DNA of 63,770 nucleotides from Octopus bimaculoides (Eukaryota). The stretch covers positions 43,877,782 to 43,941,551 of the forward strand of contig NC_068991.1 of assembly GCF_001194135.2 (NCBI RefSeq). The letters are read 5' to 3'. The translations under genes were made by a program, and so were the position numbers. Each line of letters opens with the position of its first letter. Position 1 is the stretch's first letter. Positions 4,997 through 57,459 of this stretch are shown here, one piece after another. A model generated the notes under the pieces. That model did no database searches and was not told the DNA's origin. It saw nothing but the letters and a program-made list of their open reading frames with translations.

Positions 4997-5312
4997 NNNN
5001 NNNNNNNNNNNNNNNNNNNNNNNNNNNNNNNNNNNNNNNNNNNNNNNNNNNNNNNNNNNNNNNNNNNNNNNNNNNNNNNNNNNNNNNNNNNNNNNNNNNN
5101 NNNNNNNNNNNNNNNNNNNNNNNNNNNNNNNNNNNNNNNNNNNNNNNNNNNNNNNNNNNNNNNNNNNNNNNNNNNNNNNNNNNNNNNNNNNNNNNNNNNN
5201 NNNNNNNNNNNNNNNNNNNNNNNNNNNNNNNNNNNNNNNNNNNNNNNNNNNNNNNNNNNNNNNNNNNNNNNNNNNNNNNNNNNNNNNNNNNNNNNNNNNN
5301 NNNNNNNNNNNN
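4997..5312. other. Assembly gap (N). Other gaps: 14284-14847, 31400-31413, 36491-36967, 38340-38349, 40316-40400, 43774-43987, 53653-53662
   Basis: Direct reading. Confidence 0.99.
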
Positions 5313-14073: not shown

Positions 14074-14889
14074 GTTTTTGAGCAACACACTTCAATTTAT
14101 GTTCCTCTGTGATCATTTCAACATTTGATACTTGTGCACCTGTACAGGCAATGTTGATGTGATGGAGGTAATGTGCCTATGTACAACACAAACATTTGAT
14201 CACTATAAACAAATCATCCATGTAGTTGTTCAGCAAGAAATTCTGGAACTCTCATCAGCCATCTAATGATGAGAGAGTCTATANNNNNNNNNNNNNNNNN
14301 NNNNNNNNNNNNNNNNNNNNNNNNNNNNNNNNNNNNNNNNNNNNNNNNNNNNNNNNNNNNNNNNNNNNNNNNNNNNNNNNNNNNNNNNNNNNNNNNNNNN
14401 NNNNNNNNNNNNNNNNNNNNNNNNNNNNNNNNNNNNNNNNNNNNNNNNNNNNNNNNNNNNNNNNNNNNNNNNNNNNNNNNNNNNNNNNNNNNNNNNNNNN
14501 NNNNNNNNNNNNNNNNNNNNNNNNNNNNNNNNNNNNNNNNNNNNNNNNNNNNNNNNNNNNNNNNNNNNNNNNNNNNNNNNNNNNNNNNNNNNNNNNNNNN
14601 NNNNNNNNNNNNNNNNNNNNNNNNNNNNNNNNNNNNNNNNNNNNNNNNNNNNNNNNNNNNNNNNNNNNNNNNNNNNNNNNNNNNNNNNNNNNNNNNNNNN
14701 NNNNNNNNNNNNNNNNNNNNNNNNNNNNNNNNNNNNNNNNNNNNNNNNNNNNNNNNNNNNNNNNNNNNNNNNNNNNNNNNNNNNNNNNNNNNNNNNNNNN
14801 NNNNNNNNNNNNNNNNNNNNNNNNNNNNNNNNNNNNNNNNNNNNNNNGTTTAATACATTCATTTTAGATATTTTATATATGGGAATAAT

Positions 14890-16882: not shown

Positions 16883-16921
<39 letters not shown>

Positions 16922-17140
16922 GTAAAGACTATTTGCCAACATAATGTGGCTGTCCTGGAAGGGACGATTGTTACTGTTTCTAGCTGGCTATACGACACAA
17001 TATCTATGTCCTTATATCATATTATATTATGTTCTATATTGTGTCATATAACCAGCTGGAAACGATATTTCCTGGGGCTAAACAACAGTAACAACTGTCC
17101 CTTTGAGGACAGCCACATTATGTTGGCAAATAATCTTTAC
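16922..17140. mobile_element. Fold-back fragment related to the 3' end of the 48.8-kb element, abutting (TA)n 16884-16919
   Basis: Arms 16922-17003 and 17036-17140 are inverted. Right arm shares TACTGTTG-TTTAGCCCCAGG...CCAGCTGG.TAT..GACACA with 48830-48882. Confidence 0.7.
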
Positions 17141-17657: not shown

Positions 17658-20003
17658 TTCCTATGGGACGACTTGTTGAGAGCTACTGACCAGATCTGTG
17701 GATGGTGCAAAGACCCCTCTCGACCCAAGGTAATGTGGTGGTGCAACAATGTAGTTGACAGGGCCATTAGGGAAAAGAAACAGGCATGGACGGACTAGAA
17801 GAACAGTGGTAGCAGGGAATTGTACCAGATTGCCAGAGGGGAAGCTAGGAGACAGGTTTACTTAGTCAGAGGAGAAGCAGATAAGAAAAAATTCGCCAAT
17901 GTTCTGCATCGTGAGGACCAGACACTGGAAGTGTTTTGTGTCACAAGACAGTGTGTGAGAGACAATCATGATGTCATAGGAGAGATATGTGTCCACATGG
18001 ATGCTGGCTCACTTGCATTTAATGAGGCTGTAATGAGAGAGACTTGGAGACGCCACTATGAAAAGTTGCTAAATGAAGAGAATGAATGAGAGAAAGAGAG
18101 TCTGCCGAATGTCGACCCAACAGAAGGACCAGCTATCTAAATTGACAGTACCCATCAGGAATCACCGTAGAGATGCTTAAAATATCTGGCGGTGTCAGAT
18201 ATAGCCTAGTCACCCATATAGTCAGTCAGGTGATACATGAAGGAGTCATACCCAATGACTGATGTAGCAGCACCATAGTCAATTGCTACAAAGGTAAAGG
18301 TAATGCATTAGATACGAATAATTACAGAGGTATCAAGTTGTTGGATCAGATAATGAAAGTCACTGAGAGGGTCATAGCCCAACTAATTAGGGAGAGAGTC
18401 AGTTTAGATGAGATGCAGTTTGGGTTTGTGCCAGGGAAAAGCACCACTGATGCTATATTTCTGGTAAGACAGCTGCAGGAGAAATACCTAGCCAAAGATA
18501 AACCTCTGTACCTGGCTTTTGTTGACATGGAGAAAGCCTTTGACAGGGTCCCCCGATCCCTTATCTGGTGGTCATTGTGGAAACAGGAATGCTGTCAGTA
18601 AAGTGGGGGCTGGCAACGAGTACAATGAAGAATTCCAGGTAGGTGTAGGAGTCCTCAGCCCCCTCTTATTCATCATAGTCCTCCAGGCAATAACACAGGA
18701 ATTCAAGACAGGATGCTCCTGGGAGCTCCTCTATGCTGATGACCTTGCTCTAATAGCTGAGTCACGATCAGAACTAGAGGAGAAGTTTCAGGTGTGGAAG
18801 CAAGGACTAGAATCAAAGGGCCTTAGAGTCAATCTAGCAAAAACAAAAGTCTTAGTAAGTAAGAAAGCATACAAATCACAAATCCCATCAGGTAGATAGT
18901 CCTGCTCGATAGAAAAAGCGTAGGTAGAAACTCCATAAGATGTACCCAGTGTAGGCTATGGACACATAAGAGGTGCAGCAATATCAAAGGAAGGCTAACT
19001 GAGAAGATAGTTTTTGCGTGTGGCAAATGCTCAGGGGCAATAAACACTGAAAATGTACAGAAAACAGCTTCCGTCACATGCCAGGGAGAAAAACTAGAAG
19101 TAGTTGATAGCTTCTGTTACCTAGGTGACCAAGTCAGTAGCGGGGGTGGATGCTCTGAGAGTGTAGCTGCTAGAATAAGAATAGCCTGGGCAAAGTTCAA
19201 AGAGCTCCTACTTCTGCTGGTGACAAAGGGCCTCTCGCTCAGAGTAAAAGGTAGACTGTATGACGCATGTGTGCGAATAGCCATGCTACATGGCAATGAA
19301 ACATGAGCCATGACTGTAGAGGGAACTTGTGGAAGAGGTGGACCCAGGAAGACCTGGGATGAGGTGGTGAAGCATGACCTTCAAACATTGGGCCTCACAG
19401 AGGCGATGACAAGTGTCCGAGACCTTTGGAGATATGCTGTGCTTCAGAAGACCTGGCAAGCCAAGTGAGACTGTAACTTTGGCCTATGCTAGTGCAGCAT
19501 AACAGGCCCATTTAAGAATACCCTTCAATCATCGGGCAATAAACTGAACTTGCGAAGACCTGTTGAGTCAAGTGAAGTCATTGTCGTGGCTGATGACAGT
19601 ATCACCCATGCCGGTGGCATGTAAAAAGCAGCATTTGAGTGTGATCGTTGCTAGTATCACCTGACTGGTCCTGTGCTGGTGGCATGTAAAAAGCATCATT
19701 TCAGTGTGATCATTGCTAGTGCCGCCTGACTGGCTCCTATGCTGGTAGCATGTAAAAAAGCACTATTCGAGCATGGTCAATACCAGTGCCGGCTGACTGG
19801 TCCCGTGCCGGTGGCATGTGAAAAGCACCCACTACATTCTCGGAGTGGTTGGCATTAGGAAGGGCATCTAGCTGTAGAAACTTTGCCAGATCAGAATGGA
19901 GCCTGGTGCAGCCTTCTGGCTTGCCAGCCCTCAGTCAAACTGTCCGTCCCATGCCAGCATGGAATGCGGACATTAAACAACGACAACGATGATGATGATG
20001 ATG
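17658..20003 (+). mobile_element. 5'-truncated RTE-clade LINE, RT disrupted by stops and frameshifts, (GAT)n tail
   Basis: QFGFVPGKSTTDAIF, YLAFVDMEKAFDRV, LSPLLF, ELLYADDLAL, VNLAKTK; 3' UTR and tail at 19470-20003. Confidence 0.95.
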
Positions 20004-20004
20004 C

Positions 20005-20070
20005 ATACATACATACATACATACATACATACATACATACATACATACATACATACATACATACATACAT
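20005..20070. repeat. (ACAT)n microsatellite fused to the RTE tail
   Basis: Direct reading. Confidence 0.95.
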
Positions 20071-20999
20071 TCTACTAAACAAATTACCTTTCTACTAAAT
20101 CATTTTATGTTCAGTCATGCTTGAAACATCTCAGCCTCCTCTTTTTCCATTTTAAACTGAGTGTCAACCTAAGACATACATTGTGTATGTCCTTTTGTTA
20201 TTTGTGTTTTTATTTTTCATTTGCTTGATATATATATATATAAAATAGCAACCTTAAATCTATTTAACATTTTTCTTTATTTGATTTATTTCATTTCAGT
20301 TATTTTTTTTTATATGGGAATATATTATATTTGAAATGAATGTATTAAACTCCAACAACAATCAAGTTATTGTGAAAACAATTACCATGAATTATTTTAG
20401 AATTTTATGGCATCCTAAATGTCTTATCTGTTAATTGAAATATCTTTTCTCCAAGCAAAACACTGAGTTACTGCCCCTGTTATACACAGATTCTGTCATT
20501 CACTTTAATATAAGGATAAGAAACTTTGTCTTTATTTTCTTAGCAATTTTTTTTTTTTTTACCCTACCAGTTATAAATTTTAGAAAAACTGTTCTAAATT
20601 ACTATAACATATACACGATTTTACAGTCACAACATTTAAACTGTTGAAATCTCATTTTAGCAGTAATGCATCTTTTTATTGATATTTAACAGTATTTTTT
20701 ACAAACGCAATCTTTTATTTGCAAATATAAATACTCTGTTATTTATAATCCATTAGAATAATATTTTTACATCCATTTATATTAAATTTCTCCCTTCTCC
20801 AAATTTACATACTTTTCATTGCACATCTAATGTATTTTAGCATATCCATTATCTTCTCCCTCACATTGTATTTTTTAACAAACTAGTTGCAGCTTCATTA
20901 TTTTTCGGATATTGTAATTCTACCTTCCCTACCATTCTCTTCCATGTTTGATTACACACACACACACACATCATGATAATGATGGCAGCCCATTTGTCT

Positions 21000-21540
21000 C
21001 CAAAGATCATGAAGAAGAATGACACGCCTTCAAGTCGTTATGTAACCTGATCAATGATGCTGCAGGACTTTCTTCCTCATAGTGCTTAATAGTTTTAAAG
21101 TGAGAGTCAGTTCGTGTAATCTGATTCCGCTCTTTAGACTTGGAGATCTGACCACAGTGGCTCAGCAGGCTAAGATAGCTGCAACGACCAGAAAGCAGTA
21201 GATTTTACATTGGAGTGGCCTTCTCCTAGGTGAATTGACTTACAGGGATGGAGAGCTCCATCTACCCTGGAGTTGCCAAAAGGATGTCAAAAGGGGCACT
21301 GCACCACCTGAGGGACCCCATTCCTTGCTTTACAATGGAAGTTGACTATCCAAGTATTTTCCTTTCCCAAGGCATTCACAAGGCTGTGAGGGTTTGTGCT
21401 TGGAGTTTCTTCCATAACATGCTAAATAACCCATAAATAGGACTTTCACAAGTGCTACTACACTGGGTCAGAATAGACCTGAGAATAATAGTGACTACAA
21501 GGTGGTTCCACACTCCTCAAAATGTTGGACTTCTTGAAAC
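21000..21540 (-). mobile_element. Old RTE-like 5' UTR relic (tentative)
   Basis: Minus strand contains CTAGGAGAAGG.CACTCC, recalled from RTE 5' UTRs; no ORF. Confidence 0.35.
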
Positions 21541-21721
21541 AAGGACCCACTACTGGATGCAGGTATGTCTGTGTATTGAATATTATATATATATATATAT
21601 ATATAGGTATGTCTAGATGTATGTATGTATATAATGTATGTATATATGTATATATGTGTGTGTATATATGTGTGCGTGTATATGTATGTGTGTATATATA
21701 TATATATGTATGTAAATATAT

Positions 21722-23769
21722 GTGTCCATAGCTTACACTGGGTACATCTTATGGAGTTTCTACCTACACCTTTTCTAAAGATCGAGCAGGGCCATCTACC
21801 TGAAGGGGTTTGTGTTTTGTCTACCTTCCTACTTATTAGGACTTTGGTTTTAGCTAGGTTGACTCTAAGGCCCTTCGATTCTAGTCCTTGCTTCCACACC
21901 TGAAACTTCTCCTCTAGTTCTGATAATGACTCAGCAATTAGGGCAAGGTCATCAGCATAGAGGAGCTCCCAGGGGCATACCGTCTTGAATTCCTGTGTTA
22001 TTGCCTGGAGAACTATGATAAATAGTAGGGGGCTGAGGACTGAACCTTGGTGGACCCCTACCTCTACCCGGAATTCTTCACTGTACTCGTTGCCAACTCT
22101 CACCTTACTGACAGCATCCCTGTACATGGCTTGCACAGCTCTCACTAACCACTCATCTATCCCTAGTTTCCTCATTGACCTACAGATAAGGGAGTGGGGG
22201 GCCCTGTCAAAGGCTTTTTCCATGTCAACAAAAGCCAGGTACAGAGGTTTTTCTTTGGCTAGGTATTTCTCCTGCAGCTGTCTTACCAGAAATATAGCAT
22301 CAGTTGTGCTTTTCCCTGGAACGAACCCAAACTGCATCTCATCTAAACTGACTCTCTCCTTAATTTGTTGAGCTATGACCCTCTCAGTGACCTTCATTAC
22401 CTGGTCCAACAACTTGATACTTCTGTAATTGTTTGTGTCTAAAGCGTCACCTTTACCTTTGTAGTTGTTGACTATTGTGCTGCTACACCAGTCATTGGGT
22501 ATGACTCTTTCGTGTATTACCTGATTAACTATATGGGTGACTAGGCTATAGCCGACACTGCCAGATATTTTAAGCATCTCTGCAGTGATTCCTGATGGGC
22601 CGGAGGCTTTCCCTGTCTTCATACTCTTGATCGCTTTATCTACCAAGGTACTTACAATTAGGATAGCTGATCTCTCTGTTGGGTCGACATGCGGCAGCCT
22701 CTCTTCCCCCCATTCTCTTTATTAAGCAGCCTTTCATAGTGGCGTCTCCAAACCTCTCTCTTTGCAACCTTGTTTAGTGCAAGTGAGCCACCATCCAAGC
22801 GGACACATTTCTCACCTACGACATCACAATTCTCTTTCACACACTGTCTTGCACCACGAAATACTTCAAGTCTTTGGTCCTCACGGCGCAGAACATTGGC
22901 AAATTTTTTCTTATCTGCTTCCCCTCTGGCTAAGTAAACCTGTCTCCTAGCTTCCCTTCTGGCAGTCTGATACAATTCCCTGCTACCTCCGTTCTTCCAG
23001 TCCTTCCAAGCCTGCTTCTTTTGTCTAATAGCCCTGTCTACCACATTGTTCCTCCACCACGTTACTTTGGGTCAAGAGTGGACTTTGCACCAGCCACAGA
23101 TCTGGTCGATGGCTCTCAGCAGGTTGTTCCGTAGAAACCTTCAATTGTCTTCCACGTTGTGTGATGCTATATCCCCTTCTATTTCATCAAATGGTTTGAG
23201 TAAGACATTTCTAAATCTCTGTCCATTTGCAGGATCTTTAAACTTCCAAACCCTTCTCCTCCAAGCTGGTCTACTTCTGGGCAACCATTTAGCCTTGATC
23301 CCAAAGTCGCTAACTACTAATCTGTGTTGAGGGGTACATTCTTCACCTGGGAAGGTTTTGGAATTTATAAGCTGTCCTCTTTCCCTATTTCTGGCGAGGA
23401 TGTAGTCAATTTGGCTAGTGTGTCTGCCGGAATGGTAGGTGACTAGGTGACAGGCAGGTTTCCTGAAGTTGGTATTGCAAACCATAAGATCGTTTGCATC
23501 ACAGAACTCCAGCAGTCTGGTTCCCTCTTCATTTCAGGAACGAAGCCATAACCTCCATGTACGCCATAGAAGTCCCCTGCATGTTGTCCAACATGACCAT
23601 TGAAATCACCAGCCACAAAGAGAAGGTCCCGTCATTCGTCAATGAGGTAGTTTGCAACAGGGTGCCATAGAAATTGTCTTTCTGCCCATCTGGTAGCCCT
23701 GGTTGAGGGGCATAGGCCGAGATGACGGTAGCTAACCTATGGTGAAGTACTAGTCTAATTTTAAGTACT
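21722..23769 (-). mobile_element. RTE-clade LINE fragment (partial APE endonuclease + RT), truncated at both ends
   Basis: VISAYAPQ, DFNGHVG-like, QIDYIL, KASGPSG, RT motifs GVHQGSVLSPLLF and LYADDL in ORF 21495-22646. The last about 75 aa of that ORF are read-through into a microsatellite. Confidence 0.95.
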
Positions 23770-24803
23770 GATGAGATGGATGCAAATTCAAGTGCTGGTC
23801 CTGATGGTTTCCCAGCAATCCTTCTCAAATCGTGTAAGCATGCCCTGGCAAAACCCCTCCAGATTCTCTTCCAGAGCTTTCTTGCAAATTGCAGGCTGCC
23901 AAGCAAACTGAAGGAGGGAATAATATGCCCAATCCATAAAGGGAGAAGCAGAGCAGATGCCAAAACCTATAGGCCTATCTCTCTGATTTCACTCATCAGC
24001 AAAGTCATGGAATGGATAGTCAGAAGGAAACTAATTGCATTCCTTGAAGAAAACAATTTCCTCAGTGATACCCAGCCTGGCTTTCGACCAGGTACGAGCT
24101 GCCTGACTTAGCTCTTACAGCACTATGACTGGGTGTTAAGGCAGTTACTCAACAACTCAAATGTGGACGTAATATACCTTGACTTTGCAAAAGCTTTAGA
24201 TAAAGTGGATTATGGTATATGTCACAAACTGCATGATCTTGGCATAACTGGAAAACTTGGTGAGTGGTTACAGGCAGTAGTGGCCAATGGAGCAACTCAA
24301 TGAAAACACAAATGATGAACGGTGTTCCACAGGGCACTGTCTTGGGACCACTGCTTTTTATAGTGGCCCTCTCAGATATGCCCTCAACTACCTGGATAGC
24401 CACCCTTGCTAGCTATGCAGACGATAGGAAAGTCTTCCAGAAAATACAGAACCCCAGATAGGCTGAAGATAATAATATACAGTTTAATGCTGAAAAATTC
24501 CAAGCCCTGCGCTACCAGCATCCAAAACTGAATATAAAACTTACAGGGTACACTGGTTCACAGGGGATTACAATCCCAGAGCCTAAATCAGTAATTGAAC
24601 TAGGTATCTACATGAGTGATGATACCCTTTCCAAGTGCACATTACAAGGATAGTGACAAAGTGCAGATGACTGGCTGGATGGATCCTGAGAACTTTCAGA
24701 ACCAGAGAGAAGGAAACCATGATGGTCCTCTGGACAACATTTATCCTCAGCCGCCTTGATTACTGCTCCCAGCTATGGTCACCCAACAGTGCAAAATTAA
24801 CTC
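23770..24803 (+). mobile_element. CR1/L2-group LINE RT fragment
   Basis: SAGPDG, YRPISL, QPGFRPG.SC, DVIYLDFAKA.DKV, GVPQGTVLGPLLF, SYADD; C-terminal part matches the 50-kb copy. Confidence 0.9.
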
Positions 24804-35084: not shown

Positions 35085-36023
35085 ATATGTGTACTCGGCC
35101 AGTGGTCAGAAATAAGGTAAAGGATGACTTATCCGAGAAAATAACATTCTTCCATTGCTCTAGGGACAAATTCTGTAAGCTTTTACTCCACTCTAATCAC
35201 TTTGCAATGTTTGTTTTTGAAAGGAGTGGTTTTTTGATTGCAGTCCTCCCATGAAATCCGGTTTTGTGCAACTCCTGAGAAACAGTTTTTGTGGAAAATG
35301 GGTTCTCGGGGTGGTCATTAAGCTCTGCAGTAATTTTGGGAGCTGTACTTTTGTGATCCTTTCTAACAATTCGCATAAGAATCTGACGGTCCCTATCTGA
35401 AAGTTTTGGTTTTCTACTGGAGTTTTGTTTTGACGAGGAGGTCTTTCCCTCTTTCTCAAAGGCTGTCATTACTTTCAAGACAGTACTTCTTGATACACCA
35501 AACATTTCAGCTGTTTTCATTATGCTAGTGCCTGTTATACGAGTACCAACAATTTGACCTCTTTGAAAGTCTGACAGATCTGTCATTTTAATGAATTTTA
35601 ATTACCTTTTTCTGATGATATCTGAAAAGAAACAGCAATTTTAGCAAAACATATTAAGCAACACTAGTAATAAAAAACACAAAAATAAACAAGCTATTGA
35701 CAGTTTTATAGATAATACAGTTCTATATTTAAGAGATGAGGAATTATGTACATTATTTACATTTGATGGATATTTGTACTCATCTTGTTTGTTGTTAGCA
35801 CGTTTCAGCTGATATACCCTCCAGCCGTCATCAGGTGTTTTGGGGAAATTTTGAACCTGATGAAGGCTAGAGGGTATATCAGCCGAAATGTTGTGTTAAC
35901 AACAAACAAGACGAGGACAAATATCCATCAAATGTAAATAATGCAAATAATGTAAGTTTTATAGATATTTCAAAATTATGATGCTATAATTCTAGGTGTT
36001 TCTATTATTTTGTCCAACCCCTG
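35085..36023 (-). mobile_element. Tc1-like element, left part, interrupted by the hammerhead element
   Basis: ORF 35197-35586 (paired-like HTH, ...GFHGRTAIKKPLLS) then WKNVIFSDKS. TIR TA|CAGGGGTTGGACAAAATAATAGAAACACC at 35995-36025. Confidence 0.9.
35715..35954. mobile_element. Second fold-back copy of the hammerhead-bearing element (no tRNA head)
   Basis: Same terminus CAGTTCTATATTTAAGAGATGAGG as 3406. Inversion at ACCTG microhomology near 35855. Perfect 13-bp TSD AGTTTTATAGATA (35702-35714, 35955-35967). Confidence 0.9.
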
Positions 36024-36485: not shown

Positions 36486-36967
36486 ATATANNNNNNNNNN
36501 NNNNNNNNNNNNNNNNNNNNNNNNNNNNNNNNNNNNNNNNNNNNNNNNNNNNNNNNNNNNNNNNNNNNNNNNNNNNNNNNNNNNNNNNNNNNNNNNNNNN
36601 NNNNNNNNNNNNNNNNNNNNNNNNNNNNNNNNNNNNNNNNNNNNNNNNNNNNNNNNNNNNNNNNNNNNNNNNNNNNNNNNNNNNNNNNNNNNNNNNNNNN
36701 NNNNNNNNNNNNNNNNNNNNNNNNNNNNNNNNNNNNNNNNNNNNNNNNNNNNNNNNNNNNNNNNNNNNNNNNNNNNNNNNNNNNNNNNNNNNNNNNNNNN
36801 NNNNNNNNNNNNNNNNNNNNNNNNNNNNNNNNNNNNNNNNNNNNNNNNNNNNNNNNNNNNNNNNNNNNNNNNNNNNNNNNNNNNNNNNNNNNNNNNNNNN
36901 NNNNNNNNNNNNNNNNNNNNNNNNNNNNNNNNNNNNNNNNNNNNNNNNNNNNNNNNNNNNNNNNNNN

Positions 36968-43773: not shown

Positions 43774-44509
43774 NNNNNNNNNNNNNNNNNNNNNNNNNNN
43801 NNNNNNNNNNNNNNNNNNNNNNNNNNNNNNNNNNNNNNNNNNNNNNNNNNNNNNNNNNNNNNNNNNNNNNNNNNNNNNNNNNNNNNNNNNNNNNNNNNNN
43901 NNNNNNNNNNNNNNNNNNNNNNNNNNNNNNNNNNNNNNNNNNNNNNNNNNNNNNNNNNNNNNNNNNNNNNNNNNNNNNNNNNNNNNNATGAGGTAATGAA
44001 GAGCTTTTCCTTCTAAACCAGAAACATGTTTATGATTAACTATGGCTAGTTTAGTTCATTATTTTTTCTTCTTGTTTTGCCTATGTGAGTTGCGGGTAAC
44101 TGCTATCTGTTGCTGATCCCTTAATTTTGTTTATAAATGTATAAGAACTTTTAAATAAGTTCCACACCGATAATGGTGCTTACATACCGAAGGGCTTGGT
44201 AAAAATTATTAATTGTTGATTTATTAATAAATTGATAATCCTTTACCCTTTTAATTGTAATATATATATATATATATATATCCATGCTTGAAACTCAGAG
44301 TACCAAGGAGTCTGAATCAAACTGTTTTAATCTCTGTGTGTGTGTGTGTATTAGTTGAACTATATACAACACTTGTTAGATATATAGAGATCTAAAGTAG
44401 ATTTACAGGTGTATATTGAACATATTTTTCAAGTTTATTTCACTACTGAAACTAAGGTTCTTGGAAAAAATTTCATTGTCAGAAGTTCTCGTACCTATTT
44501 AAGAAACAT

Positions 44510-48538: not shown

Positions 48539-48613
<75 letters not shown>

Positions 48614-48660
48614 GTGTATATATATATATTTATATATAAGTATATATGTATATACATATA

Positions 48661-48717
<57 letters not shown>

Positions 48718-48781
48718 GTATATATATAAAAATATATATATATATGTATATATATATATTTATATATATGTATATATATAT
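48537..48781. repeat. Long degenerate (TA)n/(TG)n microsatellite
   Basis: Direct reading. Confidence 0.95.
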
Positions 48782-49308
48782 GTGAAGTATATTTGCCACT
48801 TAAATGTGGCTAGACCCTAAGGGTGAATGCTACTGTTGCTTTTAGCCCCAGGAGAACATCTCCTCCAGTTGGCTATTGACACACTTTCTGTGCCCTGTCG
48901 GTATTTGCAAAGGGAAGTCATCCTTCCCATCGTCGATCTGACGTGATACGCACGGACTCGAGTTTCTGGGTATTTACCCTTCGTCAGCGTATGACAATCA
49001 CCGATCTTTGATGCGAAGGGCTCCCAATGCAAATACATATATACTTTTCCCAGTGACGAAAATTCACTGATCTCGAAAAAGTGTAAACAAGCAATGTTAA
49101 ATCTCTGAACGAGGTATAAACAGTAACTGCACGACGTGAAGTATATTTGCCACTTAAATGTGGCTAGACCCTAAGGGTGAATGCTACTATTGCTTTTAGC
49201 CCCAGGCGAACATCTCCTCCAGCTGGTTATTGACACACTTTCTGTGCCCTGTCGGTATTTGCAAAGGGAAGTCACCCTTCCCATCGTCAATAGCCAGCTG
49301 GAGGAGAT
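48782..49308 (-). mobile_element. Retrozyme-like element: 354-bp unit present 1.43 times, plus a short 5' inverted piece
   Basis: 153-bp direct repeats 48782-48934 and 49136-49288; inverted 23-mer at 49286-49308; no ORF. Confidence 0.8.
48951..48991 (-). ncRNA. Minimal type I hammerhead ribozyme motif with intact core
   Basis: Minus strand: TACG-CTGACGA-A-GGGT(AAAT)ACCC-A-GAA-ACTCGAGT-C-CGTG. Palindromic 8-nt stem III; predicted GUC cleavage between 48955 and 48954. Confidence 0.75.
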
Positions 49309-49457
49309 TGTCACATATTATATTACAGAGAAATTCCTTTATTTACACAATATTGAAGTCTCTTTCATTCTTTTGTTGTCTTATCATTACTATTAATATA
49401 TATGTATATATACATATGTATTCGTATGTGTATATAAGTATATTTATATATATATAT

Positions 49458-49817
49458 CTCTTTTACTCTTTTACTTGTTTCAGTCATTTGATCGTGGCCA
49501 TGCTGGAGCACCGCCTTTAGTCAAGCAAATCGACCCCAGGACTTATTTTCTGTAAGCCTAGTACTTATTCTATCAGTCTCTTTTGCCGAACCGCTAAGTT
49601 ACGGGGATGTAAACACACCAGCATCGGTTGTCAAGCAATGTTGGGGGGACAAACACAGACACACAAACACACACATATATATACATATACATATATATGG
49701 CAAGCTTCTTTTCAGTTTCCATCTACCAAATCCACTCACAAGGTGCCATACAGTGGGACTGAACCTGAAACCATGTGGTTGTTAAGCAAGCTACTTACCA
49801 CACAGCCACTCCTGCGC

Positions 49818-49852: not shown

Positions 49853-49904
49853 TTTTATTCTTTTACTCATTTCAGCCTTGCGGCTGTGGTCTTGCTGGAG
49901 CACA

Positions 49905-50825
49905 ACCATGTCTCTCTGACTTCCTGAGTCTGGGTGTTTCACATCACTACTCCTGTATGTGCCTTTGTCCCAGCTGTTGGTCCATCCGGTGGAAAGGAGG
50001 ATGTCTAGTTCCATTTTGAAGACATCTACTCCCACCTTATGCAAATTTCTTAATTTTTGTGGCAGAACATTGAAGAGCTGTGGGCCTTTGAACCATAGAC
50101 TATTGCAGTACCTGGTCCTGAATTTAGATGGAGTGGATGGTACCTTTGGTACAATACAATGGCGGCCAGTTCTGGCATTTGTATAACACTCAATACCAAA
50201 GTTAGGTACTAGCCCTTCTAGGGTTTTCTATATGAACATTATTGCATATCTCTCATGCCTTCGCTCCAGGGAGTAAAGCTGTAGTTTTATTAGCCTATCT
50301 CTATAGCTCATCCACTGCACAGTTTCAATCTTTTTAGTGTAGTGGTGTTGGACTGCTTCAAGCTCCGCTGTTAGTTTGGCACTATGCGGTGACCATAACT
50401 GGGAGCAGTAGTTCAGGCAGCTGAGAACAAAGGTTCTCCACAGGGTCATCACAGTTTCTTGGTCTCTTGTCTTGAAGGACCTCAGTATCCATCCTGCCAG
50501 TTGTCTGCACTTTGCTGCCATCTTGCTTATATGCATATGAAATGATGCATCATTGCACATACTGATCCCCAAGTCTTTCACTGCCTGTGACTATGGGATT
50601 GTAGTGCCTTGGGGTCCTGTAAATGTAGATTGTACTGTATTTGTGAGTTGATAGTGCAGTACTTGAAATTTTCCAGCATTAAGCTGCATGTTATTTATTT
50701 CAGCCCACTTGTATATTGAGTTTAGGTCCCGTTGTAAGTTTGTGACATCATCTTAGTTTTTTTTATTGCCTGTGATAATTTTGTATCATTGGCATAGCTA
50801 GTGACAGTGGCTGTCTGATTGACAA
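49905..50825 (-). mobile_element. CR1/L2-group LINE 3' fragment (same family as 23770-24803)
   Basis: SYANDTK, KDLGI, CSQLWSPH, YSLERR (ORF 50228-50581). Confidence 0.9.
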
Positions 50826-53867: not shown

Positions 53868-54334
53868 TATATATATGTGTGTGTGTATACATAGTCAAAC
53901 ATTCATACACAGCACACATATCAACATGATGTTTTGTTGTGTATTTTGAAATCGTCTTATCTACTGTTAAAAGGAAATGTTTTAGATAAATCTAAAAGAT
54001 ACAATGAAATTGTTATTTCCTTCTGTTTTGATTGTTTCACCAAGTGATTTTTGGAATGTTATACCAATGCTACAAAATGTTCCCATGAATTGATAAGATA
54101 CTTATCCTCTTTCTGTCTTCAATATCTGAGTTTTGTTATTGTTTTCGTTGATAGTTTTCAAGAACAATGGTAGAGTATTTTATTGTAGTTAGTCTTTGCT
54201 TCAACTCTTTACCTCTCATCGATCTGAGGATGAAATACTGCATCAGAAATTATTGTTACCCATTGCTTGAATGTTAATTTTTCTTCCTTGTCGTCAGTAT
54301 CACGGTCATCATCGCTGCCGCCACCACCATCGTC

Positions 54335-57352: not shown

Positions 57353-57459
57353 AAAAATATGGAATGCTTCATGAATTTACATGTTATTCTTGCACAGGGG
57401 CGATGCTAATGTCCTCTGTATCATTCTAATTCTAGTATATGTACAGCCAAAGCTAGTAC
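57353..57459 (-). pseudogene. U6: Full-length U6 snRNA pseudogene
   Basis: Ungapped alignment to the human U6 sequence as I recall it: 88/106 identical. ACAGAGA box mutated to ACAGAGG; many CpG transitions; ends in TTTTT. Confidence 0.93.

What the first reader, a model, noticed from the sequence alone, without database searches (positions are those of the whole stretch)
48782..49308. Candidate retrozyme: 354-bp non-coding unit in partial tandem with an intact-core hammerhead ribozyme
Seen: two 153-bp direct repeats exactly 354 bp apart (1.43 units) and no ORF. The minus strand carries CTGACGA, stem II GGGT/ACCC, GAAA, a perfect palindrome ACTCGAGT as stem III, then a GUC site and a stem I partner. 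The 3' end abuts a long (TA)n tract. A 23-nt inverted piece joined through GTC microhomology caps the 5' end at 49308, exactly one unit length from the predicted cleavage site (48954+354). Known: minimal type I hammerheads with palindromic stem III occur in Penelope pseudo-LTRs and in metazoan non-LTR retrozymes, are proposed to cleave as dimers, and yield circular RNAs. Inference: this is a reverse-transcribed copy of a circular or multimeric ribozyme RNA. Caveats: the pair closing stem II is an A-A mismatch, and stem I has only 3-4 bp. I cannot tell whether this family is already catalogued.
Basis: partly seen in the sequence, partly recalled or inferred. Interest (0 to 1): 0.85.

Follow-up and report, generated by a model that had tools for sequence, protein, structure and literature searches.

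The report
Dead copy of hammerhead-ribozyme retroelement
This is most likely a defunct, reverse-transcribed 1.4-unit copy of a roughly 354-base non-coding animal mobile element carrying one minimal hammerhead ribozyme, which is a known kind of element (retrozyme or Penelope-associated) and not a new one.

Summary
A direct repeat of 156 nt (96% identical, 354 bp apart) lies next to a 231-bp (TA)n tract. The minus strand carries a complete hammerhead core with three helices. A 23-nt inverted piece caps the far end.

The motif is unlikely to be chance. It had 0 hits in 300 dinucleotide shuffles under a strict descriptor. It scores only 19.1 bits against Rfam Hammerhead_1, whose threshold is 34.

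The ribozyme is the minimal Penelope-like-element (PLE) style:
- an extra A after A9
- a 4-bp helix II
- a palindromic ACUCGAGU helix III
- a 4-bp proximal helix I that continues into a long imperfect helix

An additional A sits between C11.1 and G12. The 354-nt RNA is unusually self-paired (z -4.2).

The locus has only one ribozyme copy, so it cannot release a unit on its own. A second, diverged locus (16930-17140) shares only the structured 3' module. That locus is an inverted pair and ends at the same terminus against (AT)n, which points to retroposition from a fixed 3' start site.

No further family copies could be retrieved, so conservation of the core across the family, circular RNA and cleavage are all untested.

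Verdict: a plausible new member of a known kind, of moderate interest.

The parts
48551..48781 (.). (TA)n tract, with some TG, abutting the 3' terminus of the element. It is either the AT-rich target or a 3' tail.
   Evidence: TRF period 2, 115.5 copies, 86% matches; sequence.
48782..48883 (-). Module A, copy 1. This is the 3'-terminal ~100 nt of the element: three hairpins followed by a single-stranded tail AAAUAUACUUCAC.
   Evidence: Direct repeat. Fold shows three hairpins. Homologous to 16930-17140.
48884..48937 (-). Module B, copy 1 (about 54 nt, contains the GGGAAG/CUUCCC hairpin).
   Evidence: Part of the 156-nt direct repeat.
48938..49135 (-). Module C (198 nt), present once. It carries the hammerhead and the 5' strand of the long helix I.
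   Evidence: No second copy in the window by blastn or nhmmer.
48951..48991 (-). Minimal type I hammerhead motif. Helix I is UACG/CGUG. The core is CUGACGA, then A, then helix II GGGU/ACCC with loop AAAU, then A, then GAAA. Helix III is AC/GU with loop UCGA (palindrome ACUCGAGU), followed by GUC. Cleavage is predicted between 48955 and 48954.
   Evidence: Rfam RF00163 scores 19.1 bits, E 0.013 on a 91-nt stretch.
48905..49035 (-). Extended imperfect helix I. The sequence downstream of the cleavage site pairs with the sequence upstream of the core (GUGAU/AUCAC, GAUC/GAUC, CCUUC/GAAGG and others). This closes the ends of the unit RNA.
   Evidence: Constrained and free folds.
49136..49237 (-). 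Module A, copy 2. It is internal: its terminus CUUCAC is joined directly to the start of C.
49238..49291 (-). Module B, copy 2. This is the 5'-most direct-orientation part of the insertion.
49286..49308 (+). 23-nt inverted copy of the inner end of module A, forming the 5' cap of the insertion. It carries the inferred ancestral base at both sites where A1 and A2 have each mutated.
16930..17140 (-). Related locus of a diverged subfamily. It is an inverted pair of the A module (arms about 100-110 nt, about 90% alike, about 32-45 nt between them), with the same terminus abutting (AT)n at 16884-16919. It has no C module and no hammerhead.

Best explanation
The minus strand is the sense strand. The locus reads 5'-a'(23 nt, inverted)-B-A-C-B-A-(AT)n-3'. 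It is a dead, retroposed copy of about 1.44 units of a roughly 354-nt non-coding RNA element (C-B-A) that carries one minimal type I hammerhead ribozyme. It belongs to the ribozyme-bearing non-autonomous retroelements of animals, meaning non-LTR retrozymes and derivatives of Penelope-like-element pseudo-LTRs.

Proposed working of the family; the steps are inferred unless marked as shown:
1. Master copies in tandem are transcribed into multimeric RNA.
2. Two ribozyme copies pair through the palindromic ACUCGAGU to form a double hammerhead. The palindrome and a favourable predicted dimer are shown.
3. The double hammerhead cleaves after GUC.
4. The 354-nt product folds into a compact, branched rod whose two ends are held together by the long helix I. 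The fold and its z-score are shown. This would favour ligation into a circle.
5. A reverse transcriptase supplied in trans, most plausibly from a Penelope-like element, starts at a fixed site just 3' of the hairpins of module A. The same terminus at two loci is shown.
6. It starts on a multimeric or circular template at a nick in AT-rich DNA and copies more than one unit.
7. The end of the cDNA snaps back for 23 nt before joining. The inverted piece with ancestral bases is shown.

This genomic copy has a single ribozyme and an extra A next to G12. It is therefore not expected to release a unit-length RNA by itself.
For: - Repeat, spacing, TA tract and inverted piece are confirmed.
- All invariant hammerhead core positions are present with a GUC site. 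It is the only hit in the window, with 0/300 and 0/100 shuffles.
- The Rfam Hammerhead_1 match has E 0.013 for 91 nt times 4227 families. By my arithmetic that is about 0.002 for this one family over the whole window.
- The motif has the three features listed for Penelope-type minimal hammerheads in PMC4209133: an extra nucleotide between A9 and G10.1, a G10.1-C11.1 pair, and palindromic 15.2-16.2 plus loop 3.
- A mismatch at the base of helix II occurs in the active axolotl retrozyme ribozyme HHR_Amex2 (PMC7229834).
- Two motif copies co-fold at -38.9 versus 2 x -13.7 kcal/mol, with an 8-bp intermolecular helix III.
- The unit RNA cut at GUC has MFE -114.2 and z -4.16, with its ends paired.
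- GC is 44% and the unit is 354 nt, within the 150-450 bp range and under 50% GC given for metazoan retrozymes. Mussel repeats are 350-390 bp (PMC7229834).
- There is no coding signal.
- The second locus has the same 3' terminus against (AT)n and is arranged as an inverted pair.
- The three hairpins of A are kept despite 26% divergence.
- Partial tandems, inverted 5'-truncated copies, AT-rich or (TA)n targets and internal initiation at a stem-loop are Penelope-type hallmarks (PMC8557442, PMC11167929).
- a' carries the ancestral state at both sites that differ in A1 and A2, so all three copies date from one event.
Against: - The Rfam score of 19.1 bits is well below the gathering score of 34. 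The model's own alignment uses a different helix I register that consumes C3.
- An extra A lies between C11.1 and G12. Equivalently, there is an A-A mismatch at 10.1/11.1, where PMC4209133 reports a highly conserved G-C directly flanking the core.
- Proximal helix I has only 4 bp, including a G-U.
- The free-energy minimum of the monomer is an inactive fold, 9.4 kcal/mol better than the ribozyme-constrained fold.
- There is only one ribozyme at the locus.
- The ribozyme-bearing module C has no second copy anywhere I could search. The only relative lacks it.
- No Penelope-type ORF is in the window. The reverse-transcriptase fragments present are LINE-type.
- SINE and LINE copies next door also end in (AT)n, so the (AT)n does not single out a Penelope-type partner.
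- No target-site duplication could be read in the low-complexity flanks.
Confidence: 0.6

Rival explanations
1. This is an ordinary short non-autonomous retroposon or foldback-type repeat with a local partial duplication. The hammerhead-like string is either a decayed relic or a fortuitous match with no ribozyme function in the family.
For: - The match is below the Rfam threshold.
- There is an extra A beside G12 and a weak helix I.
- The inactive fold is preferred.
- The only other family locus lacks the motif and is an inverted repeat.
- At about 0.002 expected per 64-kb window, a gigabase-sized genome would hold dozens of chance matches of this quality (my arithmetic).
Against: - 0 of 300 shuffles give a comparable motif in this window.
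- It sits in exactly the expected context: a non-coding tandem unit of retrozyme size.
- It has the unprompted Penelope-type details, namely the extra nucleotide after A9, the palindromic helix III and a GUC site.
- A long complementary extension of helix I closes the unit.
Confidence: 0.17
2. This is a fragment of an autonomous Penelope-like element, such as a solo pseudo-LTR or a heavily 5'-truncated insertion, and not a separate short non-autonomous element.
For: Minimal hammerheads lie in Penelope pseudo-LTRs and are mostly found as single motifs from truncated copies (PMC4209133). Partial tandem, inverted 5' piece and AT-rich target all fit (PMC8557442, PMC11167929).
Against: 5'-truncated Penelope insertions keep the 3' end of the ORF (GIY-YIG endonuclease). 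Here the 117-codon open frame and the other frames have no homologue and no Pfam domain. The A|C junction joins a defined 3' terminus directly to the start of C, giving a complete 354-nt unit.
Confidence: 0.1
3. This is a DNA-level event. It is either a remnant of a 354-bp satellite array shortened by unequal exchange, or a replication-slippage duplication, with the 23-nt inversion produced by fold-back repair. No reverse transcription was involved in making this copy.
For: Hammerhead-bearing satellites exist (newt satellite 2, cited in PMC7229834). Tandem repeats can arise without RNA. The flanks are microsatellite-rich and prone to rearrangement.
Against: Two diverged loci end at the same nucleotide-level terminus, each followed by (AT)n on one side only. 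This is retroposon polarity, like the neighbouring SINE and LINE copies.
Confidence: 0.1

Closest known systems
Metazoan non-LTR retrozymes (Cervera & de la Pena 2020, PMC7229834), for example the 350-390-bp repeats of the mussel Mytilus galloprovincialis and the 330/350-bp axolotl repeats
   Same: - Non-coding unit of 354 bp with GC under 50%.
- Tandem arrangement.
- Type I hammerhead with a short palindromic helix III, expected to act as a dimer.
- Highly self-paired unit RNA.
- The axolotl HHR_Amex2 also has a mismatch at the base of helix II.
   Different: - Only 1.44 units and one ribozyme here.
- The ribozyme lacks a recognisable canonical helix I/loop 1 architecture. It looks like the minimal variants that the same paper assigns to Penelope-like elements.
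- Circular RNA is not shown.
- The element has a fixed, structured 3' terminus shared with a ribozyme-less relative.
Minimal hammerheads of Penelope-like element pseudo-LTRs (Cervera & de la Pena 2014, PMC4209133)
   Same: - Extra nucleotide between A9 and 10.1.
- G10.1-C11.1 pair.
- Short helix I (4-5 bp).
- Palindromic 15.2-16.2 and loop 3.
- Mostly found as single dispersed motifs.
- Low or dimer-dependent activity.
   Different: - Helix II is 4 bp, against 6-8 bp in many Penelope families.
- There is an additional A between C11.1 and G12.
- No reverse transcriptase/GIY-YIG ORF is associated.
Penelope-type insertion architecture and non-autonomous Penelope derivatives (Craig et al. 2021, PMC8557442; Frangieh et al. 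2024, PMC11167929; Li et al. 2026, bioRxiv 10.64898/2026.07.22.740005)
   Same: - Partial head-to-tail tandem.
- Inverted piece at the 5' end, and a full inverted pair at 16930-17140.
- Insertion next to (TA)n or AT-rich DNA.
- A defined start point beside a stem-loop that is internal to the tandem RNA.
- A short non-coding element that would depend on a partner's 3' end.
   Different: - The partner element is not identified.
- The 23-nt inverted piece is internal sequence, not a terminus-outward truncated copy.
- No 30-40-bp 'tail' was recognised.
Hammerhead-bearing SINE-like and satellite repeats: Schistosoma Sm-alpha and newt satellite 2 (as cited in PMC4209133 and PMC7229834)
   Same: Repeats of about 330 bp with a type I hammerhead, dispersed or tandem, and dimer-dependent cleavage in newts.
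   Different: Those carry canonical ribozymes with loop 1-loop 2 contacts. No sequence similarity was tested or expected.

Membership tests
Hammerhead ribozyme, type I (Rfam RF00163) | Invariant core C3 U4 G5 A6 N7 G8 A9 ... G12 A13 A14 ... A15.1-U16.1, with H17 not G | tested here: met
   CUGACGA ... GAAA ... GUC read directly. 0/100 shuffles match the core-plus-palindrome pattern.
Hammerhead ribozyme, type I (Rfam RF00163) | Three helices around the core, with helix I open-ended | tested here: met
   Helix I has 4 bp (one G-U) plus a long imperfect extension. Helix II has 4 bp. Helix III has 2 bp plus a palindromic tetraloop.
Hammerhead ribozyme, type I (Rfam RF00163) | The 10.1-11.1 pair directly adjoins A9 and G12 | tested here: not met
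   An A lies on each side of GGGU/ACCC. The 5' A has precedent in Penelope-type motifs (PMC4209133). I found no precedent for the 3' A.
Hammerhead ribozyme, type I (Rfam RF00163) | Score at or above the Rfam gathering threshold (34 bits) | tested here: not met
   19.1 bits, found only when a 91-nt stretch was searched. Absent.
Hammerhead ribozyme, type I (Rfam RF00163) | Site-specific self-cleavage after H17 | not testable with these tools
   Needs in vitro transcription of monomer and dimer.
Metazoan non-LTR retrozyme | Short (150-450 bp), low-GC, non-coding repeat in tandem | tested here: met
   354-bp unit, 1.44 units, GC 44%, no homologues and no Pfam hits.
Metazoan non-LTR retrozyme | A ribozyme in each unit, so that two cleavages release a unit-length RNA | tested here: not met
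   Module C and its ribozyme occur once at the locus. This speaks to this copy, not to the family.
Metazoan non-LTR retrozyme | Canonical type I ribozyme with helix I/loop 1-loop 2 interaction | tested here: inconclusive
   The proximal helix I has 4 bp and is followed by a 5x3 internal loop. No conserved loop nucleotides could be assessed. Mussel retrozyme ribozymes also lack them (PMC7229834).
Metazoan non-LTR retrozyme | Highly self-paired unit RNA | tested here: met
   MFE -114.2 kcal/mol, z -4.16 against dinucleotide shuffles.
Metazoan non-LTR retrozyme | Multi-copy family expressed as circular RNA | not testable with these tools
   The source genome and transcriptome are not available. 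Protein-based and pattern-based searches of the collections found nothing.
Penelope-like element (autonomous) | ORF with a telomerase-like reverse transcriptase and a GIY-YIG endonuclease | tested here: not met
   No domain in any frame of the unit. The nearby ORF 50228-50581 has no significant Pfam match and looks like a LINE reverse-transcriptase C-terminal region only by my reading of its sequence. The window's reverse-transcriptase ORFs are LINE-type with a PHD finger.
Penelope-mobilised non-autonomous element / pseudo-LTR derivative | Minimal hammerhead with an extra nucleotide after A9 and a palindromic helix III | tested here: met
   compared with the feature list in PMC4209133.
Penelope-mobilised non-autonomous element / pseudo-LTR derivative | Partial tandem plus an inverted 5' copy, with an AT-rich or microsatellite target | tested here: met
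   1.44-unit tandem, 23-nt inverted cap, (TA)n at the 3' end. The relative at 16930-17140 is an inverted pair next to (AT)n. Hallmarks as described in PMC8557442.
Penelope-mobilised non-autonomous element / pseudo-LTR derivative | Sequence similarity of the 3' end (or pseudo-LTR) to an autonomous Penelope-like element of the same genome | not testable with these tools
   There is no Penelope-like element in the window and the source genome is not available.

The most novel reading that the evidence does not exclude
This is an uncatalogued retrozyme family of a marine invertebrate whose hammerhead tolerates an unpaired A on both sides of helix II. Its retroposition always starts at a structured three-hairpin 3' module that it shares with ribozyme-less relatives. 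That would be a natural example tying retrozyme propagation to the internal-initiation mechanism recently shown for Penelope-like reverse transcriptase.
Probability: 0.2. Interest if true: 0.55.

Novelty: new member of a known kind. Interest (0 to 1): 0.35.

Why it matters
If the family consensus keeps the ribozyme, this adds one more lineage to the already large set of animal genomes with hammerhead-bearing non-autonomous retroelements.

The locus would also be a tidy specimen. It shows in 527 bp a partial tandem, an inverted 5' cap made in the same event, a fixed 3' start site beside conserved hairpins, and an AT-microsatellite target. Together these bear on the open question of whether animal retrozymes are copied from circles or by Penelope-type internal initiation on multimeric RNA.

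As a single decayed copy it has no expected function at this site.

Tried and rejected
- **Other ribozymes or RNA families.** I searched both strands of 48700-49400 with Rfam at E up to 10 and found only low-complexity noise. The whole window at gathering scores gave only a U6.
- **More family copies through predicted proteins.** I used the 117-codon open frame of the unit as a protein query against 5.8 billion predicted proteins. Nothing scored. Exact look-ups of the 73-aa unit ORF and of the 383-aa reverse-transcriptase ORF also found nothing.
- **DNA pattern scans.**
  - An A-module pattern in the metagenome contigs gave 16 loci. All match only the pattern itself and are chance hits.
  - The ribozyme pattern and the A-terminus pattern in the viral contigs gave 0.
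- **Identifying the host.** Homologues of the reverse-transcriptase ORF come from marine invertebrates (Hydractinia, Mercenaria), with the best at 79% identity and none at 90% or more. The source genome is therefore not in that collection. My impression that the SINEs look cephalopod rests on memory only.
- **DNA transposon or MITE reading.** Neither locus has a target-site duplication of TA, TWA or 8 bp, and (AT)n lies on one side only. Rejected as the main explanation.
- **Twin-priming origin of the inverted piece.** This would need sequence from upstream of the direct segment. The piece instead duplicates sequence 51 nt away inside the direct segment. A snap-back is simpler, but I cannot decide between them.
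- **tRNA-like head.** ARAGORN found none in the window.
- **A second relaxed-descriptor hit at 54221-54310.** It has stems of 3, 3 and 2-3 bp, disappears under the strict descriptor, and is chance level.

Full report
**1. What is in the sequence**

The window is metazoan DNA rich in transposable elements. It holds a spliceosomal U6, LINE reverse-transcriptase fragments, a Tc1-type HTH ORF, SINE-like repeats and many (TA)n tracts.

At the reported coordinates, a direct repeat of 156 nt (48782-48937 and 49136-49291) is 96% identical with a spacing of 354 bp. The six differences include five transitions. A (TA)n tract of 231 bp (48551-48781) abuts the low-coordinate end. At the other end, 49286-49308 is the reverse complement of unit positions 77-99.

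Read on the minus strand, the locus is 5'-a'(23 nt, inverted)-B(54)-A(102)-C(198)-B-A-(AT)n-3'. The 354-nt unit is C-B-A. Module C occurs only once.

**2. The hammerhead**

The minus strand at 48991..48951 reads UACG-CUGACGA-A-GGGU(AAAU)ACCC-A-GAAA-C(UCGA)G-UC^CGUG. Every invariant core position is present, the cleavage triplet is GUC, and helix III plus its loop form the palindrome ACUCGAGU.

Three tests bear on chance:
- A strict descriptor (helix I at least 4 bp, helix II at least 4 bp, helix III at least 2 bp) finds only this site in both strands of the window. It finds none in 300 dinucleotide-preserving shuffles.
- The core-plus-palindrome pattern is absent from 100 shuffles.
- Rfam Hammerhead_1 matches at 19.1 bits with E 0.013 for a 91-nt search against 4227 families. 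By my arithmetic this rescales to about 0.002 for that one family over the whole window.

The score is far below the gathering threshold of 34 bits. The match is not reported in the whole-window search or the 701-nt search. The motif is therefore not a chance feature of this window, but a hit of this quality would recur by chance in a gigabase genome. Context has to carry part of the argument.

**3. What type of hammerhead it is**

Cervera and de la Pena (PMC4209133) list features that emerged unprompted in the minimal hammerheads of Penelope-like elements:
- a G10.1-C11.1 pair
- palindromic 15.2-16.2 and loop 3
- a short helix I of 4-5 bp

All are present here if the A after CUGACGA is read as that extra nucleotide.

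What has no precedent in what I read is the second A, between C11.1 and G12. A U-U mismatch at that place exists in the axolotl retrozyme ribozyme HHR_Amex2, which still cleaves, and cleaves better as a dimer (PMC7229834).

The same paper states that non-LTR retrozymes carry canonical type I ribozymes, while the minimal variants belong to Penelope-like elements and Terminons. On ribozyme type, this locus leans towards the Penelope side.

**4. Folding**

- The 57-nt motif alone prefers an inactive fold in which C3 is paired (AUACGC/GCGUAU, -13.7 kcal/mol).
- Two copies co-fold at -38.9 kcal/mol with the 8-bp intermolecular ACUCGAGU helix expected of a double hammerhead.
- In a 131-nt context, the ribozyme-constrained fold (-37.0) is 9.4 kcal/mol worse than the free minimum (-46.4).
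- In both folds, the sequence downstream of the cleavage site pairs at length with the sequence upstream of the core. Helix I therefore continues through an internal loop into a long imperfect helix.
- The 354-nt RNA defined by cleavage at GUC folds at -114.2 kcal/mol, z -4.16 against dinucleotide shuffles, with its two ends held together (circular fold -108.3).

Such compact, self-paired RNAs are what PMC7229834 describes for retrozyme circles. None of this shows that a circle exists.

**5. A second family locus changes the picture**

The first ~100 nt of the unit (module A) match 16930-17140 at 74% identity. That locus, on the same strand, is an inverted pair of A modules. Its arms are about 90% alike, with a short AT-rich spacer. 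Both termini point outward, and the 3' one (...GGCAAAUAGUCUUUAC) is followed at once by (AT)n. It has no module C and no hammerhead.

Two things follow.

First, the element has a fixed 3' terminus (...GGCAAAUA-NN-CUU-N-AC) that meets (AT)n on one side only at both loci. (TA)n covers only 1.3% of the window. This is retroposon polarity, as for the SINE and LINE copies immediately upstream on the same strand, which also end in (AT)n. In the tandem, that terminus is joined directly to the start of C, so it is internal to a multimeric or circular template.

Second, module A folds into three hairpins followed by a single-stranded tail. The diverged copy keeps hairpins at the same places with different sequence: GGAGA/UCUCC versus GGAAA/UUUCC, ACCC/GGGU versus GUCC/GGAC, and GCCAC/GUGGC versus GCCA/UGGC. 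With only two lineages this is suggestive, not a test.

**6. How the copy was probably made**

The literature describes the following for Penelope-like elements:
- partial head-to-tail tandems, an inverted 5'-truncated copy at the 5' end, and a bias for microsatellites, including (TA)n in Naiads (PMC8557442)
- a purified Poseidon enzyme that nicks AT-rich DNA, extends both strands, and starts reverse transcription at a stem-loop internal to a multi-copy RNA (PMC11167929)
- vertebrate retrozymes that are phylogenetically nested with Penelope pseudo-LTRs (bioRxiv 10.64898/2026.07.22.740005)

The present locus (1.44 units, inverted cap, AT target, fixed start beside hairpins) and the inverted pair at 16930-17140 fit that description.

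The 23-nt cap differs from A1 and from A2 by one base each, at different sites. At both sites it carries the base shared with the other copy. All three copies therefore descend from one template and one event.

The cap duplicates sequence only 51 nt away and overlaps the direct copy by GTC(A/G)AT. A snap-back of the cDNA end is the simplest reading, though I cannot exclude other template switches.

However, the last 17-20 nt are not the sequence that follows the cleavage site, so it gives no evidence that the template began at the cleaved 5' end.

**7. What could not be done**

The decisive test is the family consensus in the source genome. It was out of reach:
- The open frame of the unit found no predicted protein anywhere.
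- Exact look-ups failed.
- Pattern scans of the metagenome and viral collections gave only chance matches or nothing.
- The best homologue of a LINE ORF in the window is only 79% identical, so the source genome is not represented.

The partner reverse transcriptase is unknown. No Penelope-type ORF lies in the window, and the neighbouring SINE shares its 3' tail with a LINE, not with this element.

**8. Verdict**

This is most likely a decayed, retroposed partial dimer of a hammerhead-bearing non-autonomous element. Its ribozyme and insertion architecture point to Penelope-type mobilisation at least as much as to a circular-RNA route.

The kind is well known. Thousands of such motifs occur in invertebrate genomes (PMC4209133, PMC7229834), and 235 Rfam Hammerhead_1 loci were reported in a squid genome (PMC6962438). 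Novelty is limited to a possible new family and a helix II flanked by two unpaired As. Interest is moderate.

Noticed in passing
window 16930-17140 (minus strand), with (AT)n at 16884-16919: An inverted pair of the element's 3' module A. The arms are about 100-110 nt and about 90% alike, the 3' arm has a ~23-nt deletion, both termini point outward, and (AT)n lies on the 3' side only. There is no hammerhead. It looks like a Penelope-type head-to-head insertion of two heavily 5'-truncated copies of a diverged subfamily.
   Followed up: partly
window 48782-48883 versus 17036-17140: The three hairpins of module A are kept at equivalent positions despite 26% divergence, with changes on both sides of the stems (for example GGAGA/UCUCC versus GGAAA/UUUCC). 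This suggests a selected RNA structure next to the fixed 3' terminus.
   Followed up: partly
window 49170..48820 (minus strand): A stop-free frame of 117 codons in a unit of 118 codons (354 = 3 x 118), so a circular unit would carry exactly one stop in that frame. It has no homologue and no Pfam domain. By rough Poisson arithmetic, about 15% of such units would show this in one of six frames.
   Followed up: yes
window 57353-57459 (minus strand): A U6 spliceosomal RNA match at 81.1 bits covering the full model, with several substitutions in normally conserved stretches. It could be a gene or a retro-pseudogene.
   Followed up: no
window 49461-49511 and 49853-49903 (minus strand): A SINE-like repeat and a LINE fragment share a 51-nt 3' tail (GTGCTCCAGCA...GTAAAAGA.TAAAA) followed by (AT)n. 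This is a classical SINE/LINE partnership. The SINE sits directly after the LINE's (AT)n tail.
   Followed up: partly
window 18519-24111: Several LINE reverse-transcriptase fragments lie on both strands. The longest ORF is 21495-22646 (RVT_1, E 3e-33). Homologues carry a PHD finger and come from marine invertebrates, with the best identity at 79%.
   Followed up: partly
window 35197-35586 (minus strand): An ORF with a Tc3-type transposase HTH domain (PF01498, E 2e-13), a remnant of a Tc1/mariner element.
   Followed up: no
window 4997-5312, 14284-14847, 36491-36967, 43774-43987 and smaller runs: Assembly gaps totalling 1690 N, often next to microsatellites or SINE copies. Repeat structure near them cannot be trusted.
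   Followed up: no
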